DNA of 64,000 nucleotides, from IMG/VR virus record IMGVR_UViG_3300042868_009074, positions 203,767-267,766 of that record. One strand, written 5' to 3'. How positions within the stretch are numbered: the first letter of the stretch is position 1; each line of letters opens with the position of its first letter. The notes under the pieces were generated by a model that had not been told where the DNA came from, did not search any database, and worked only from the letters and a program-made list of their open reading frames with translations. Both the position numbers and the translations under genes were made by a program. This document shows positions 1-24,814 of this stretch, one piece after another.

Positions 1-101
1 CAAGGACTGTCCGGGCACACAAGGATTGCATCTCTGACGAGAGATGTAGTCTTGTATCTATATAGATCTTTAAATGTCATAGTGTCCTTAGGAGGTACAC
101 T

Positions 102-254
102 ATGTCCGCTATTTGCGCACGTTGTCGCTTGGAAAGCAACAACATCACACCACAGTCCATCGACCACATCCGTGGTCATTACGCAGCATTCCATGCTGCT
201 TCGTCGAAGCCTCGCAAGGCTCGTGCGAAGAAGGCCCCAGCGAAAGCTGGGTGA
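102..254 (+). CDS. small basic protein, 50 aa (CxxC...H...H, Lys/Ala-rich tail); not in ORF track
   Basis: AGGAGG at 90-95, ATG 102, TGA 252-254; reads MSAICARCRLESNNITPQSIDHIRGHYAAFHAASSKPRKARAKKAPAKAG. Confidence 0.6.
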   Translation: MSAICARCRLESNNITPQSIDHIRGHYAAFHAASSKPRKARAKKAPAKAG

Positions 255-566
255 CCTTCAACCGTTTATATGTCTTTAGTTTATATCTATAGTCTCACGT
301 TTCAGGGATTGGAAACCAGTGAACTAAGTGAATAGTATGAGGAGTCCGCGAACGATTGTCCTACTGAACGCTGTAATAGTATCTTATATATGTTTATATA
401 TATGTTGGAGCAATGTCTTAGACTTGATCAGGCATAGTTATTTTGCCGGCAAACAATTACGTCTATATTATTAATAGACATATATCTTAAGTTTTAATAT
501 TATATTATTCTAAATTTTCAAATAGGGACCCAATCCGTGGGTTTCTTGTAGTAGTTTGGAGAAACT

Positions 567-992
567 ATGAAAGTCCGTATCAACGCTCTTGCTTCTGGCA
601 AGGGCTCAACTCAGCAAGCACCAATCCAAAAGCGTTCCGCTGATGGTCAACGCTTCGCTTTCTTGGTTAGCATTATGGATGCTACCAACACTGTACCAGT
701 CGACCTTCGTTTCGACTCGGTTGCCTCTGATGGCGTCAAGTACCAGAACTTCTCTGGTGCGTATGAACTCTGGTTTTCAGCAGAAGAGAACTCTGAGATT
801 GTTTCTCGGTTCAACACAGCAAAGGCTTCTGGCCAAGTTGTGTACTATGAGTTCACTTGCTTGACCGCTGACAAGTCTGTCCCCTATCTCTCTGAGAAGG
901 GTGTCACTTATCAGACCATCATCCTGAATGCTGACCGCTTTGCGGAACGCATTTGCGGTTTGGCACCAGTGCCCGCCATCAAGTTCGTTTGA
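567..992 (+). CDS. hypothetical protein
   Basis: 141-aa ORF with GGAG upstream and biased codon usage. Confidence 0.75.
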   Translation: MKVRINALASGKGSTQQAPIQKRSADGQRFAFLVSIMDATNTVPVDLRFDSVASDGVKYQNFSGAYELWFSAEENSEIVSRFNTAKASGQVVYYEFTCLTADKSVPYLSEKGVTYQTIILNADRFAERICGLAPVPAIKFV

Positions 993-1464
993 TGAGATTT
1001 GCCACCAAGTTCTCTTGGTGAAGACACCAGTCTGGTCACTTCGGTGACTAGGCTGTGTGTAACCCCCTCTATATATCCTTAGGTTTGATTTCACCTAGCA
1101 CTGATCCGCTGAAACAATCCTTGTGTCCTACCTTGTGTAGTTGTGTACTGACGAGTACATTACTACATTAGGTAACACTCGTACCTACATAGATTCTAAA
1201 TCTATAATCGATCTCAAGTTCTCTGGGGTTGGGCCCCCAGTTAGATGATTGCAGGTATCATATCGATATCTTTAGCCCGTTGTCCCGCTTTAAGGCATTT
1301 CCATTTGGATTTGCCGGCCAGGCAACAAAAGCAAACATATGATAGTTTGGTAGATACCTACGGCTGATTGCCAAGAAACTACCCTTTTCGTTAGTATAAG
1401 TATACTTATCCCCTAATGTATCTATAGCAATATATATATTATTGTTGGACAAATGCTTATATTA

Positions 1465-2092
1465 ATATCTCTCAGGGGTATACCCATTATAAAACTATGC
1501 ATATGTAACCTGCCAAGGTGTTATGCATTTGGGTATACTAGACACGGCAAATGTAAGTATACCCAATATGGGAGATTATCTCCCCCTATATTAGGTGTCT
1601 CTATACTCTCTTATTCCTTTCTAGAGTATATGATATACCCCTGAGAATATTCGTGTTCGTTGGTTTTGCCGGCGAACCACAAGATTTCTTAAGAAGAGTC
1701 TGTATAGCGAGTCTGTAACTGATTAGACTAAAACCCGATTGAGTTACCCTTAAGTTTCCAATTGAGAAGTGCCTAATCAAGTGCCACTTTAGCCGAGACT
1801 ACAGAACTGTCTCTTTGAGACTATGGTTGATACGAAATCCCGTGATAACCTCTGCGAACGAATGCATTACCCTGGTTCAATTGTTGGATTGTACAATCCC
1901 AACCCAGCGTATGTTAGCCATCTAGTACCCATTGTTATCCTTGCAAAATAGGACCAATCTTCTTAAGATTAAAGTTTCCAACTGCACACTGCTTATTGTG
2001 TGTGCGTGTAGAAATATCGCACGGTTAGCGATAAAAACCCCTCACTGGTATATTGAGGCTCTTCTAACCGAATATACCACTTATGGTTTGTT
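1465..2092 (+). ncRNA. candidate large structured ncRNA (two closed multi-helix domains, several pseudoknots)
   Basis: Closing stems 1470-1482/1634-1646 (13 bp perfect) and 1671-1683/2080-2092; pseudoknots 1715-1720/1742-1747, 2022-2027/2065-2070, 2046-2053/2072-2079; no credible ORF; strand assumed from flanking genes. Confidence 0.55.
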
Positions 2093-2216
2093 ACTTACTT
2101 AATTTAAAAGTAACTCATGCTGAGTATCATGATGTAAAGTGCTTCCATTCTATAAGATATTTGCCTGCGGGCAATTGACCATACGCCCATACAAAACCAG
2201 AATAACAGGAGTTATT

Positions 2217-2441
2217 ATGAACACTACAAAAATTAAATCAACATTTAAGAAAACAGCTCAATATGGAGTTGTTGCGCCAGCCATTGGTGCAGGAACATTG
2301 CTTTATGGCACTGCTCTTGGTCTATGGCACATCACTAAATCTACTGGTTTTGCCCTAAAAACCATTGCTAATGATTCAGTCACAAATACTGTTGAGTATA
2401 TCAATGAAATCAAAAACCCACACGTTCGTAACGATTGGTAA
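2217..2441 (+). CDS. hypothetical membrane-associated protein
   Basis: AGGAG then ATG at 2217, a better start than the track GTG at 2139; hydrophobic stretch. Confidence 0.7.
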   Translation: MNTTKIKSTFKKTAQYGVVAPAIGAGTLLYGTALGLWHITKSTGFALKTIANDSVTNTVEYINEIKNPHVRNDW

Positions 2442-2506
2442 CAAAATGCATTTCCTATTTATAGGTTACCTGGATGGTAGTAAGCCAGGGTAAAATGCTA
2501 GCTAAC

Positions 2507-2549
2507 GGAGCCTGAGTATGCTCTGCACAAATATGCTCACCTTCGGGTG
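2507..2549 (+). ncRNA. H-type pseudoknot plus cUUCGg hairpin
   Basis: GGAGC/GCTCT stem with loop CTGAGTAT; TGAGTAT pairs with ATGCTCA 2533-2539; CACC-TTCG-GGTG 2538-2549. Confidence 0.45.
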
Positions 2550-2638
2550 CCTGGAAGGTAATGACCACCCTGAATATAGCCTTCCCCCGCTATATCAGCT
2601 GTGAGATACATAATTGGGTTCAAATCCCATTACACCCA
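2545..2638 (+). ncRNA. atypical tRNA-like element
   Basis: GGGTG/CACCC-A ends, T-loop GGG-TTCAAAT-CCC, central ATATAGC/GCTATAT arm with 8-nt loop CTTCCCCC. Confidence 0.4.
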
Positions 2639-2670
2639 CTAAAATCAAATCTATAGTTAGGAGAACTATA

Positions 2671-2850
2671 ATGAACAATAATAATCAAACTATCTATTAC
2701 GTAGTTGACCCTGCAGATGAATTCATCCTTTATCGTGGTAATCTTCAAGACTGTGAACAGGTCCTTGAACAACAATATGGAGGAGTTCTTATCTATCAAG
2801 AGTCACAACTGACTGAGGAAATGAAAACTTCAGTTTGGTATTATTTCTAA
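2671..2850 (+). CDS. hypothetical protein
   Basis: AGGAG RBS, ATG 2671. Confidence 0.7.
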   Translation: MNNNNQTIYYVVDPADEFILYRGNLQDCEQVLEQQYGGVLIYQESQLTEEMKTSVWYYF

Positions 2851-2868
2851 AGAAAGAGTAAATTTAAA

Positions 2869-3486
2869 ATGAATCAACCTAATGACAAAAAAGTAATATG
2901 GGATCCTGAAACAGAGTCTTACAAAGTTGTTTCAAATCCTGAATGGGATATTGAAGCTGAAGTTGGCATTTACTCATCGCTTGTTCAAAGCGGTGTTAAT
3001 GATACTTTAGCAACTGACATTCTATCTATGTTTAATACCACTAGACCTGTCTATTCGTGCTATTGTCACAGTGAACACACAGAAATTGGCTATGGATTTA
3101 ATCCATGCCCTTGTGCAGACTGTGAAGCAATTGCTCGTATTGAAGGTTATAATATCTCAGAACCTATAGACAACATTCAATTGCACAAAAATTCAGTTCA
3201 TGTTGTTGGCCATATGGTTCAACAACAGCTTTCTGCTATTAATAAAGTTATTGCTTCTGACAATATTTATATTTCTGAAGATGACTTTAAAACTTTTCAA
3301 TCTCTTTTAGAAGACTATGGCAAAACAGATTTGTCTTGGTCTGAAATCTTAGATTATATGGCCGTTGATCCTAGAAACTCATCTGAACCAGATCATTTTT
3401 ATGCTGTTGCTGCAGTTTTAGAATACTTCTGGATTGCATTTGTTCTCAAGAACCCAACAGTTACGGGTCATCGTCCAAAACAATAA
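2869..3486 (+). CDS. hypothetical protein with Cys/His cluster
   Basis: 205-aa ORF, CYCH...CPCADC. Confidence 0.75.
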   Translation: MNQPNDKKVIWDPETESYKVVSNPEWDIEAEVGIYSSLVQSGVNDTLATDILSMFNTTRPVYSCYCHSEHTEIGYGFNPCPCADCEAIARIEGYNISEPIDNIQLHKNSVHVVGHMVQQQLSAINKVIASDNIYISEDDFKTFQSLLEDYGKTDLSWSEILDYMAVDPRNSSEPDHFYAVAAVLEYFWIAFVLKNPTVTGHRPKQ

Positions 3487-18965: not shown

Positions 18966-19049
18966 GCCCGAGTGGCGGAATAGGCAGACGCAGGGGGCTT
19001 AAACCCCCCGGAGGGCAACCTCTTACCGGTTCAAGTCCGGTCTCGGGTA
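18966..19049 (+). tRNA. tRNA-Leu(TAA)
   Basis: GCCCGAG/CTCGGGT acceptor, GGGGG-CTTAAAC-CCCCC anticodon arm, long variable arm, GGTTCAAGTCC. Confidence 0.95.
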
Positions 19050-19078
19050 CTATGCAATACACTATAATAAGGAAAAAA

Positions 19079-19570: not shown

Positions 19571-20803
19571 ATGTCTATTCTAGTATCTGAACTAGATCTT
19601 CCTTATGTACCACCTAAACTTATTAAATCTGATTTAACAACTTATGATCAATTTAAAATTGGTTTAGAAGCTCATAAGCAAAACTGGATTGGCACAACAA
19701 AACTTTCTTATGTGATTTTAGACCACAAGCATTCTGCTGCTATGTTGAAAGACAAGAGATGGCACAATGGTTTGTATTTATTAAGCGAACTTAATCCTCA
19801 TTTTACTGAAGAGATTAAGATGAGTAGGAAAAAATTAATAATTAACTTAGAAGGCGAAGATCATTCAAGACTCAGAAAGATAATTGCTCCAGTTTTTTCA
19901 CCAAAGACAGCTGAGCTTCTTCGACCAGACATGCAAGATGCTATCAATCAAGTTCTTAATGATGTCATCGAAAGCGGTCAATGCGATTTGCAAAAAGATG
20001 TATTCAACAAGTATCCATCATACATTATCTCTAAGATAGTAGGAGTCCCCAATTCAGATTGGGAGAAGTTTAGTCAATGGGCTGATGATACCTTCAAAAC
20101 ATTTGGTGGAAACTTTGAACACCATAGCGAAGTTATATTAAATACTCAAAATGAATTAGATCAATATACTAATAATTTAATCATCAGCAAAAAAGAAAAC
20201 AAAGGCAATGACCTTGTTTCTATGTTAATTGACGCAGAATTTGATGGTCAAAAATTATCAGATCAAGAAATACAATCTCTTATCCAAGTAGTTCTGATGG
20301 CAGGCATGGATACGACTAGAGCACAGCTTGGTCTTATAGCAGTTATGCTATCTGAGAGACCAGATTTAATATCGATGTTAGCCAATGATTTAAATGTTGA
20401 AGATATAATAGAAGAGTCTACTCGCTTAGATTCTGTTTTTAAATATGTAATGAGAATTGCTTCAGAAGACATTGAATACAATGGAGTCTTATTCCCTAAG
20501 GGAACAATTATCTCCCCAGCATTGGGTGTTAATAATTACGATGACTTAGCTTTTGAAAACGCATCTGAATTTATTCTTGATCGTAAAGCAACAAAGGGCA
20601 TTACCCTGTCTTATGGTGGTGGAATTCATTACTGTCTCGGTGCTTCTTTAGCACGAGCTCAAATGCAGGAATGTATGAAAGTTGTTGCAAAAAGAATGCC
20701 AGATTATAAAATTACTGGAGAAGTTCTTTATAAAGAAGCTTACGAATCAGTAGTCGGTCCAAGATCTATCCCTGTGACTTTTACACCTAACATTAAGATT
20801 TGA
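19571..20803 (+). CDS. cytochrome P450
   Basis: H.RLRK, AGMDTT (I-helix), ESTR (ExxR), YGGGIHYCLG heme ligand. Confidence 0.95.
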   Translation: MSILVSELDLPYVPPKLIKSDLTTYDQFKIGLEAHKQNWIGTTKLSYVILDHKHSAAMLKDKRWHNGLYLLSELNPHFTEEIKMSRKKLIINLEGEDHSRLRKIIAPVFSPKTAELLRPDMQDAINQVLNDVIESGQCDLQKDVFNKYPSYIISKIVGVPNSDWEKFSQWADDTFKTFGGNFEHHSEVILNTQNELDQYTNNLIISKKENKGNDLVSMLIDAEFDGQKLSDQEIQSLIQVVLMAGMDTTRAQLGLIAVMLSERPDLISMLANDLNVEDIIEESTRLDSVFKYVMRIASEDIEYNGVLFPKGTIISPALGVNNYDDLAFENASEFILDRKATKGITLSYGGGIHYCLGASLARAQMQECMKVVAKRMPDYKITGEVLYKEAYESVVGPRSIPVTFTPNIKI

Positions 20804-24737: not shown

Positions 24738-24814
24738 GCGGGTGTATCCCCTCACTCTTATAAAGTGTAGAAAGGGTAGTTGGTGGCACGCGGGTTCAAA
24801 TCCCGTCACCCGCA
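24738..24814 (+). ncRNA. D-armless tRNA-like RNA, anticodon TAT (Ile AUA)
   Basis: Perfect GCGGGTG/CACCCGC-A acceptor, GCGGG-TTCAAAT-CCCGT T arm, CACT-CTTATAA-AGTG arm only 5 nt after position 9. Confidence 0.6.

What the first reader, a model, noticed from the sequence alone, without database searches (positions are those of the whole stretch)
1671..2092. About 420-nt ornate RNA domain with a double pseudoknot
A 13-bp G-U-rich closing stem (1671-1683/2080-2092) encloses many hairpins. At the 3' end, hairpin TATCGC/GCGATA (loop ACGGTTA) and hairpin CCTCA/TGAGG (loop CTGGTATAT) have loops that pair with adjacent segments TAACCG (2065-2070) and ATATACCA (2072-2079). A further pseudoknot sits at 1715-1720/1742-1747. 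AAAACCC follows a hairpin twice, AAGTTTCCAA occurs twice (1752, 1972), and palindromes TTCTTAAGAA (1686), GGATTGTACAATCC (1886) and TCTTAAGA (1961) could mediate multimerisation. Size and ornateness recall the phage-associated ROOL and GOLLD RNAs; it may belong to one of those classes or be new.
Basis: partly seen in the sequence, partly recalled or inferred. Interest (0 to 1): 0.82.

Follow-up and report, generated by a model that had tools for sequence, protein, structure and literature searches.

The report
New phage RNA with double pseudoknot
A giant freshwater phage encodes a long non-coding RNA, in no described family, whose best-conserved piece is a small doubly knotted module that in related phages sits just before a tRNA-like RNA and may cap RNA ends.

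Summary
The two hairpins at 2016-2058 and their loop pairings to 2065-2079 form a real interleaved double pseudoknot. Across 14 distinct copies, 97.6% of cells pair, 12 of 24 pairs show compensatory changes, and no shuffle out of 500 does as well.

The 422-nt "closed domain" does not hold. The 13-bp closing stem is good only in this genome. The pseudoknot at 1715/1742 is contradicted. The palindromes are ordinary helix strands. The middle ~290 nt (1680-1971) is an optional RNA domain, absent from 4 of 10 related lineages.

The region is the 3' part of a + strand non-coding RNA of roughly 920 nt (about 1213-2135). This RNA is conserved between a 141-aa gene and a 74-aa gene in a clade of uncultured jumbo phages, next to an array of early-promoter-like repeats.

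It matches no Rfam family, so it is neither ROOL nor GOLLD.

The 65-nt knot is an autonomous module. In four related lineages it lies, once or twice in tandem, 3-5 nt before a tRNA-like RNA, and in another phage it stands alone.

My inferred mechanism is a nuclease-resistant cap for processed RNA ends. This is untested.

The parts
1186..1208 (+). Promoter-like element (diverged copy of the early-array motif; contains a 7-bp inverted repeat). This is the inferred start region of the long RNA.
   Evidence: Nearly invariant in 10 of 11 relatives. L174 has a different early-motif-like sequence at the same place. It resembles the 20-copy motif of the upstream array. Transcription was not shown.
1223..1240 (+). 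Invariant GC-rich hairpin (CTGGGG/CCCCAG) inside a 33-nt block that is identical in all relatives
   Evidence: It never varies, so there is no covariation evidence.
1313..1318 (+). Invariant palindrome GCCGGC (site 2)
   Evidence: Present in every relative. Predicted to pair with site 3; unproven.
1470..1646 (+). Domain closed by a 13-bp helix (1470-1482/1634-1646). It encloses a variable region and conserved hairpins, for example 1601-1608/1622-1629.
   Evidence: Perfect inverted repeat in the window. The helix pairs in 99.3% of cells, with 3 compensated pairs and G.U intermediates.
1655..1677 (+). Local hairpin GTTCG/CGAAC with GCCGGC (site 3, 1668-1673) in or next to its loop.
   Evidence: L174 has TATCG/CGATA at the same place, which is two compensatory changes read directly from the alignment.
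1680..1971 (+). Optional ~290-nt multi-helix RNA domain, closed by a 10-bp stem (1687-1696/1959-1968). Inner helices include 1697-1701/1818-1822, 1712-1717/1800-1805, 1718-1723/1776-1782, 1825-1834/1841-1850, 1868-1875/1904-1911, 1883-1890/1895-1903 and 1938-1941/1950-1953.
   Evidence: Present in 6 lineages and absent in 4, with at least two different junctions. 65 pairs, 98.8% paired, 6 compensated pairs, including a C-G to G-C swap in the closing stem. Single copy, with no other copies found.
1984..2005 (+). Hairpin H0 (1984-1989/2000-2005)
   Evidence: 3 of 6 pairs compensated.
2016..2079 (+). Interleaved double H-type pseudoknot module: H1 2016-2020/2028-2032; PK1 2022-2027/2065-2070; H2 2040-2044/2054-2058; PK2 2046-2053/2072-2079
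   Evidence: Covariance model R1 finds only this one copy in the 64-kb window (92 bits).
2090..2132 (+). Hairpins H3 (2090-2096/2108-2114) and H4 (2115-2119/2128-2132; conserved loop CTGAGTAT)
   Evidence: H3 pairs in 100% of cells, with G.U one-sided changes only. H4 has 2 compensated pairs.
2217..2441 (+). Context: conserved 74-aa ORF downstream of the RNA
   Evidence: Kept open and conserved at the protein level in 7 relatives.
2507..2539 (+). Context: hairpin (loop CTGAGTAT) whose loop pairs with 2533-2539. This is a single-pseudoknot relative of the module, ending 5 nt before the tRNA-like RNA.
   Evidence: Read. Its changes in L158 are compensatory. It was not counted formally.
2545..2638 (+). 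Context: tRNA-like RNA (5-bp acceptor + 7-bp T arm + TTCAAAT loop)
   Evidence: 3 covarying T-arm pairs. Not called by ARAGORN or Rfam.

Best explanation
WHAT IT IS (largely shown). The coordinates cover the 3' third of a long, + strand, non-coding RNA (about 1213-2135, roughly 920 nt here and at least about 600 nt in the shortest relatives). It lies between a 141-aa gene and a 74-aa gene in a clade of uncultured jumbo phages, directly after an array of early-promoter-like cassettes.

The RNA is modular.
- Its most conserved piece is a 65-nt module (2016-2079) built from two classical H-type pseudoknots that interleave. Each hairpin has a one-nucleotide first loop. Each hairpin loop pairs with one half of a continuous 15-nt 3' strand.
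- The ~290 nt at 1680-1971 are a self-contained, stem-closed peripheral domain that several lineages have lost.

HOW IT WORKS (inferred). The knot is an autonomous module. In related phages it occurs once or twice in tandem, 3-5 nt upstream of a tRNA-like RNA that looks like an RNase P substrate. In another phage it is a stand-alone unit just before the next promoter-like repeat.

I propose it is a compact, nuclease-resistant cap. After processing or termination it sits at the 3' end of the upstream RNA with too short a tail for 3' exonucleases to engage, and so stabilises abundant early phage RNA. In the window it would cap the long non-coding RNA.

The function of the long RNA as a whole remains unknown.
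For: Non-coding: all six frames are closed.

Conserved synteny: every relative of the 141-aa protein (41-90% identity) is followed by a 748-1224-nt gap and then the 74-aa gene.

Structure: the 3' module has 42 pairs, 15 of them compensated. The knot in 14 distinct copies pairs in 97.6% of cells, with 12 of 24 pairs compensated and no shuffle out of 500 as good. The optional domain has 6 compensated pairs. The 5' part has 10 compensated pairs.

Strand: G.U cells outnumber A.C cells 29 to 0 in the 3' module plus optional domain, and 83 to 10 in the 5' part. All neighbouring genes and the promoter-like motifs are on the + strand.

Modularity: paralogous knot copies sit in front of the tRNA-like RNA in L155, L165, L180 and L005/L185 (two in tandem in L185). 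L181 and L182 (two contigs with an identical copy) hold a stand-alone copy.

tRNA-like RNA: a 12-bp acceptor/T stack with covariation.

Spacing: 3-5 nt between the knot and the tRNA-like RNA.

From established knowledge: one-nucleotide first loops spanning 6-8 bp are classical H-type geometry. RNase II, RNase R and PNPase need a single-stranded 3' tail of about 7-10 nt to start.
Against: No transcript, RNA end or nuclease assay is available, so the promoter and the RNA's ends are inferred.

At the finding's own copy no tRNA-like RNA follows. Hairpins H3 and H4 follow instead.

The stand-alone copy in L181 fits a trans-acting role at least as well as a cap.

Simple hairpins usually suffice as 3' stabilisers, so the elaborate knot with strongly conserved helix sequences hints at specific recognition by some partner.

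The compensatory changes come from a handful of lineages that recombine, so the number of independent events is smaller than the number of cells.

Thermodynamic z-scores do not favour the + strand (-4.4 on + against -7.1 on -, 20 shuffles).
Confidence: 0.6

Rival explanations
1. The knot, alone or with the tRNA-like RNA, is a trans-acting decoy or inhibitor. It would be an abundant early RNA that binds and titrates a host protein, for example a tRNA-directed defence nuclease, an RNase or RNase P, by mimicking the two coaxial stacks of a tRNA.
For: It stands alone as its own small unit in L181/L182. It is duplicated in tandem in L185. The helix sequences themselves are strongly conserved, not only the pairing. 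It is associated with a tRNA-like RNA. It lies beside an early-promoter-like array.
Against: No partner protein is identified. The neighbouring proteins match no family, and the fold search on the 141-aa protein is inconclusive. Very few unpaired nucleotides are conserved.
Confidence: 0.15
2. The ~920-nt RNA is a new self-assembling ornate RNA. It would behave like ROOL or GOLLD, forming a homo-oligomeric cage or scaffold, without being related to them. The invariant GCCGGC palindromes would act as symmetric kissing contacts.
For: The size, phage origin, multi-domain ornate fold, optional peripheral domains and a nearby tRNA-like RNA all recall the description of ROOL and GOLLD in PMC12286853. 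GCCGGC is invariant at 1313 and 1668 in all relatives. One copy lies in or beside a hairpin loop. In the solved cages, symmetric kissing loops are conserved palindromes.
Against: There is no covariation for any intermolecular contact. RNAalifold can pair the two GCCGGC sites within one molecule. The RNA tolerates loss of about a third of its length.
Confidence: 0.12
3. It is a cis-regulatory leader, such as a riboswitch or antiterminator, of the 74-aa gene. The knot would be the sensor and H3/H4 the expression platform.
For: The knot ends 138 nt upstream of the start codon. Two conserved hairpins lie between them. The gene is always downstream.
Against: Paralogous knots sit after genes and before a tRNA-like RNA, or stand alone. 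Almost no unpaired nucleotides are conserved to form a ligand pocket. A promoter-like conserved block lies between H4 and the gene. A 900-nt leader for a 74-aa gene would be unusual.
Confidence: 0.07
4. It is a DNA-level element of the phage genome, such as a replication origin, packaging site or injection-stop region at the border of the early region, and not an RNA.
For: It is a long non-coding stretch at a compositional border (GC about 0.40-0.44 in 1-2000 against mostly 0.30-0.41 in the kilobase windows that follow), next to an early-promoter-like array. It carries repeated GCCGGC sites and a conserved inverted repeat at 1189-1205.
Against: Compensatory changes preserve pseudoknots, which have no meaning in duplex DNA. 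The G.U versus A.C asymmetry (29 to 0) points to a single-stranded + sense molecule. The knot recurs in other genomic contexts.
Confidence: 0.04
5. It is a member of the ROOL or GOLLD families.
For: Only the general resemblance in size, ornateness and phage origin.
Against: Neither model, nor any other Rfam family, matched at gathering score in the window, at E<=10 in 1-3000, at gathering score in 12 related loci, or at E<=10 in the L165 region.
Confidence: 0.01

Closest known systems
ROOL and GOLLD RNAs (Rfam; cryo-EM structures in PMC12286853)
   Same: Large (about 600-900 nt), ornate, pseudoknotted non-coding RNAs of phages and prophages with unknown function. They lie near tRNA or tRNA-like genes and combine a conserved part with a variable part.
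   Different: There is no covariance-model match at any threshold tried. The helices and pseudoknot topology differ. The known distribution is narrow (one group of freshwater jumbo phages). No evidence of multimerisation was found.
Upstream pseudoknot domain plus tRNA-like structure at the 3' end of tobamovirus and tymovirus RNAs (from my own knowledge)
   Same: One to several consecutive H-type pseudoknots lie directly 5' of a tRNA-like structure. The pseudoknots are modular and can be duplicated.
   Different: Those are 3' ends of eukaryotic RNA-virus genomes. Their pseudoknots are simple and consecutive rather than interleaved through a shared 3' strand. Here the tRNA-like RNA lies inside a DNA phage transcript and is probably cut off by RNase P.
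MALAT1 / MEN-beta 3' end: triple helix followed by the tRNA-like mascRNA (from my own knowledge; the triple helix is also discussed in PMC10159000)
   Same: A compact protective structure lies immediately upstream of a tRNA-like RNase P substrate, so RNase P cleavage would create a structured, exonuclease-resistant 3' end.
   Different: The protective element here is a double pseudoknot, not a U-A.U triple helix. The system is bacterial or phage. Cleavage and protection are untested.
Flavivirus exoribonuclease-resistant RNAs (xrRNA) and dumbbell elements (from my own knowledge)
   Same: Hairpin or junction loops pair with downstream strands to form compact knots. The elements are often duplicated in tandem and act as nuclease barriers.
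   Different: xrRNAs are three-way junctions that form a ring against the 5'-to-3' exonuclease Xrn1. There is no sequence or topology match here, and the relevant bacterial nucleases differ.

Membership tests
ROOL (Rfam) | Match to the family covariance model at or near its gathering score | tested here: not met
   No hit in the window at gathering score, in 1-3000 at E<=10, or in 12 related loci.
GOLLD (Rfam) | Match to the family covariance model, especially the universally conserved 3' half | tested here: not met
   No hit.
ROOL/GOLLD-type behaviour | Homo-oligomeric assembly through conserved intermolecular contacts (kissing loops, A-minor) | not testable with these tools
The only lead is the invariant GCCGGC palindromes.
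ROOL/GOLLD-type behaviour | Phage or prophage location near tRNA genes | tested here: met
   The sequence is a jumbo-phage contig. A tRNA-like RNA lies 460 nt downstream. Six tRNA genes lie 17-45 kb downstream.
Classical H-type pseudoknot | Hairpin loop pairs with a downstream single strand, supported by covariation | tested here: met
   Pseudoknot 1 pairs in 100% of cells with 4 of 6 pairs compensated. Pseudoknot 2 pairs in 97.3% with 3 of 8 compensated.
Classical H-type pseudoknot | Short first loop and no nucleotide between the stems, allowing coaxial stacking | tested here: met
   Read from the sequence: one nucleotide (A2021, C2045) before each loop strand, and none between each loop strand and the 3' stem strand.
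Known self-cleaving ribozymes with double pseudoknots (twister, pistol, hatchet, HDV-like) | Match to Rfam models, and a set of conserved unpaired catalytic nucleotides | tested here: not met
   No Rfam match. The strand order differs. Only about two unpaired positions plus an A-rich linker are conserved.
RNase P-made, structure-capped 3' end (MALAT1/mascRNA type) | A tRNA-like RNase P substrate immediately 3' of the protective structure | tested here: inconclusive
   Met for the paralogous copies in L155, L165, L180 and L005/L185, with a 3-5 nt spacer. Not met for the copy at 2016-2079, which is followed by H3/H4.
RNase P-made, structure-capped 3' end (MALAT1/mascRNA type) | RNase P cleavage and exonuclease resistance of the product | not testable with these tools
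   Needs in-vitro cleavage and decay assays.
tRNA (for the neighbouring element 2545-2638) | Cloverleaf with a 5-bp anticodon stem and 7-nt loop, recognised by tRNA finders | tested here: not met
   ARAGORN and the Rfam tRNA model do not call it. Only the acceptor/T minihelix and a D-like GG are kept. The third arm is a variable long hairpin.

The most novel reading that the evidence does not exclude
Phages of this group make RNA 3' ends the way human MALAT1 does. A tRNA-like RNA recruits RNase P, and the cut leaves an interleaved double pseudoknot, a fold not described before, as an exonuclease-proof cap on the upstream RNA. The same knot caps a ~920-nt ornate early RNA that may itself assemble through invariant GCCGGC kissing contacts.
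Probability: 0.22. Interest if true: 0.85.

Novelty: new variant of a known kind. Interest (0 to 1): 0.7.

Why it matters
Large ornate phage RNAs such as ROOL and GOLLD are among the least understood products of microbial genomes, and each new class gives an independent handle on what they are for.

This one comes with three useful things.
- A small (65-nt), strongly supported and apparently undescribed double-pseudoknot fold that is easy to test in vitro.
- A natural deletion series showing which domains are dispensable.
- A recurring knot/tRNA-like arrangement that suggests a concrete hypothesis about RNA end formation and stability in phage-infected bacteria. That hypothesis can be tested with RNase P and 3' exonucleases.

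If the cap idea is right, the module would also be a compact RNA-stabilising part for synthetic biology.

Tried and rejected
- Coding potential: all six frames of 993-2216 are closed, so this is not a gene or an obvious pseudogene.
- Rfam: nothing, even at permissive thresholds.
- BLAST against deposited phage genomes: no match for the region or for the first 20 kb.
- Scan of viral contigs with the repeated motif around GCCGGC: only chance hits, a wasted scan.
- Scan with the early-promoter motif: arrays are found only in the window's own two contigs.
- Scans with an invariant 21-23-mer: one truncated metagenome contig, plus self.
- Relatives found through the downstream 205-aa gene (L005/L006) lack the region at the syntenic place. 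They later proved to carry knot plus tRNA-like RNA about 6 kb upstream.
- Mobile-element reading of the ~290-nt insert (terminal inverted repeat plus flanking direct repeat): rejected. It is single-copy. Its "inverted repeat" is an RNA stem with a compensated pair. It is present in the most distant relative, and its losses have different junctions.
- Extra knot copies in the 64-kb window: none.
- Genome-collection hit L184: judged to be chance, because the helices do not form.
- Function of the flanking proteins: no Pfam or PHROG family and no language-model lead. The AlphaFold model is mediocre (pLDDT 65), and its single-strand-binding-protein-like hits have E 0.1-1.
- Thermodynamic z-scores: they cannot tell the strands apart.
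- Literature searches: no description of this RNA.

Full report
**Where the window comes from**

The first 4 kb are identical to two IMG/VR contigs of 268 kb and 104 kb. Genes run almost all on the + strand, with six scattered tRNA genes. A helicase, a subtilase, a cytochrome P450, a JAB domain protein and an AAA+ ATPase are recognisable. No deposited phage genome resembles it. This is an uncultured jumbo phage.

Upstream of the window, and reaching into it (last copy at 58-82), lies an array of 20 copies of a roughly 25-nt promoter-like motif. Each copy has a strong ribosome-binding site, a tiny ORF and a GC-rich hairpin. The window's first kilobase has the highest GC (0.44). GC then declines to mostly 0.30-0.41 in the kilobases that follow. 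The finding lies at the downstream edge of this presumed early region.

**The observation**

The stretch 993-2216 has stops in every frame. The 422 nt fold better than shuffles on both strands (z -4.13 and -3.12). Local 150-nt windows inside it are unremarkable. Energy alone therefore says little.

**Finding relatives**

DNA scans of public collections found almost nothing. The 141-aa protein encoded just upstream (567-992) has 17 relatives at 41-90% identity. The contigs that encode them all show the same order: the 141-aa gene, a non-coding gap of 748-1224 nt, then a 74-aa gene.

The gaps align from about 1186 to 2216. They differ by three optional blocks:
- 1080-1185;
- a variable stretch around 1494-1570;
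- about 1680-1971.

It is present in six lineages, including the most distant one, whose contig ends just inside it. It is absent from four lineages, with at least two different junctions. So the 422-nt domain consists of conserved flanks around a dispensable insert.

**The double pseudoknot is real**

On ten sequences of the 3' module (1972-2140), seven helices with 42 pairs form standard pairs in 96.4% of cells. Fifteen pairs show changes on both sides. No shuffle out of 500 reaches this, and sliding the partners by 1-3 columns gives 0-3 such pairs.

A degenerate pattern of the module found further copies:
- after the 74-aa gene in L155 and L165;
- in a more distant relative, L180;
- twice in tandem in the contig of L005/L185;
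- as a stand-alone unit between promoter-like repeats in another phage, sampled as two contigs (L181/L182).

With 14 distinct copies, the four helices of the knot pair in 97.6% of cells. Twelve of 24 pairs are compensated, across 45 cells. The first pseudoknot pairs in every cell, using five different sequence pairs.

Each half has one nucleotide before the loop strand and none after it. That is classical H-type geometry, which allows each hairpin to stack on its pseudoknot helix. The two 3' strands are separated by one invariant A.

**Which strand**

Within the supported helices there are 29 G.U cells and no A.C cell in the 3' module and the insert. In the 5' part the counts are 83 against 10. 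Together with gene orientation and the promoter-like motifs, this points to a + strand RNA. The shuffle z-score of the whole RNA is, if anything, better on the - strand, so this point rests on the substitution pattern rather than on energy.

**What does not hold up**

*The closing stem.* The 13-bp stem has 12 pairs in the window. In most relatives it shows A.C at two positions, a deleted partner, and no compensating change. Its 5' strand overlaps a local hairpin (1655-1659/1673-1677) that is compensated in the most distant relative. Its 3' strand overlaps hairpin H3, which always pairs.

*The inner pseudoknot.* For 1715-1720/1742-1747, a C-to-G change is left unpaired. The same change is compensated in a different helix, 1718-1723/1776-1782, which has three compensated pairs.

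*The palindromes.* Those at 1686 and 1961 are the two strands of the 10-bp stem that closes the insert. In five of the seven long-form sequences a C-G to G-C swap keeps the stem and destroys both palindromes. The palindrome at 1886 is a hairpin with a variable centre.

**The insert**

The insert is a well-formed RNA domain: 65 predicted pairs, 98.8% paired, six compensated. It is single-copy. I therefore read it as a peripheral domain lost several times, and not as a mobile element.

**The rest of the RNA**

The 5' part (1186-1680) has 104 predicted pairs, ten of them compensated. These include the 13-bp helix 1470-1482/1634-1646, which passes through G.U intermediates. A 33-nt block around 1218-1250 is identical in all relatives.

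The palindrome GCCGGC is invariant at 445, 1313 and 1668 in every relative and is rare elsewhere in the window. Whether sites two and three pair with each other, kiss between molecules or bind a protein is open.

A conserved promoter-like element at 1186-1208 suggests the RNA starts near 1213. Conserved hairpins H3 and H4, followed by another conserved promoter-like block, suggest it ends near 2135. Both ends are inferences.

**Context that bears on function**

After the 74-aa gene, which is a real conserved ORF, lies a tRNA-like RNA at 2545-2638. It has a 5-bp acceptor stacked on a 7-bp T arm with three covarying pairs, a TTCRAAT loop, a GG in a D-like loop, and a long variable third arm. tRNA finders do not call it.

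In four lineages the knot ends 3-5 nt before this RNA's first G. In the window that place is taken by a single-pseudoknot relative (2507-2539).

By established knowledge, such a minihelix is what RNase P recognises, and the main bacterial 3' exonucleases need a longer single-stranded tail than 3-5 nt. From this I propose that the knot is a cap left on the 3' end of the upstream RNA. The logic is that of the MALAT1 triple helix and mascRNA, and the tandem copies recall duplicated nuclease barriers of RNA viruses.

The proposal is inferred and untested. At the finding's own copy no tRNA-like RNA follows. The stand-alone copy in L181 fits a trans-acting decoy equally well.

**Comparison and verdict**

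No Rfam family matches at any threshold tried, in the window or in relatives. Membership of ROOL or GOLLD is therefore rejected. The general resemblance remains: a large ornate phage RNA near tRNA-like genes, part conserved and part variable, as those classes are described in PMC12286853. Literature searches found no description of this RNA or of the knot.

I file it as a new class within the known kind "large ornate phage RNAs of unknown function". Its core fold is small, apparently undescribed and well supported.

**Limits**

- The family is known from about ten lineages that recombine.
- No expression data exist.

Noticed in passing
L001:1-5434 and window 58-82: Array of 20 copies of a ~25-nt promoter-like motif (TATATATCTTTAAAT, 0-3 nt, TATAGTG). 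Each copy has a strong Shine-Dalgarno sequence, a tiny ORF and a GC-rich hairpin without a U tract. Several cassettes have no ORF at all. It looks like a host-takeover early region read by a dedicated polymerase.
   Followed up: partly
window 2545-2638: tRNA-like RNA missed by ARAGORN and Rfam. It has a 5-bp acceptor plus a 7-bp T arm (covarying), a TTCAAAT loop, and a long variable third arm with a C-rich loop. In IMG/VR it is found only in this phage group.
   Followed up: partly
L185:1577-1716 (minus strand): Two tandem copies of the double-pseudoknot module directly upstream of the tRNA-like RNA, after the end of a protein gene.
   Followed up: yes
window 2507-2539 and 2115-2132: Two hairpins with different stems share the loop CTGAGTAT. 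The loop of the first pairs with 2533-2539, with compensatory changes in L158. A weaker partner for the second lies near 2139-2144.
   Followed up: partly
window 445, 1313, 1668: The palindrome GCCGGC is invariant at three sites in every relative. Two of the sites sit in the context TTGG-N-TTYGCCGGC. Only six GCCGGC occur in the 64 kb.
   Followed up: partly
window 1080-1185: Optional ~106-nt cassette with its own promoter-like start. It is present in some relatives, absent in others, and replaced by an unrelated ~230 nt in L171. Its pattern does not follow that of the 1680-1971 domain, which suggests recombination.
   Followed up: partly
window 567-992: The 141-aa protein always encoded upstream of the RNA has no family match. 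A mediocre AlphaFold model gives repeated but non-significant hits to single-strand-binding-protein (OB) folds.
   Followed up: partly
L180:4890-5180, L005:235-420, L168:2556-2790: Another conserved non-coding block (starting GGGCTGCACGTGTCC) follows the tRNA-like RNA in several relatives but is absent from the window. These phages seem to carry an island of RNA modules.
   Followed up: no
window 19571-20803: Phage-encoded cytochrome P450 (Pfam E 9e-25), an unusual auxiliary gene.
   Followed up: no
window 1-300: Very stable predicted structure (z about -5 on both strands) over the small ORF 102-254. A 58-nt stretch (228-285) is repeated upstream of the window.
   Followed up: no
window 18966-19050 and 24738-24814: The tRNA finders disagree. 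ARAGORN alone calls a tRNA-Leu at 18966. Rfam alone gives a weak tRNA hit (35 bits) at 24738.
   Followed up: no
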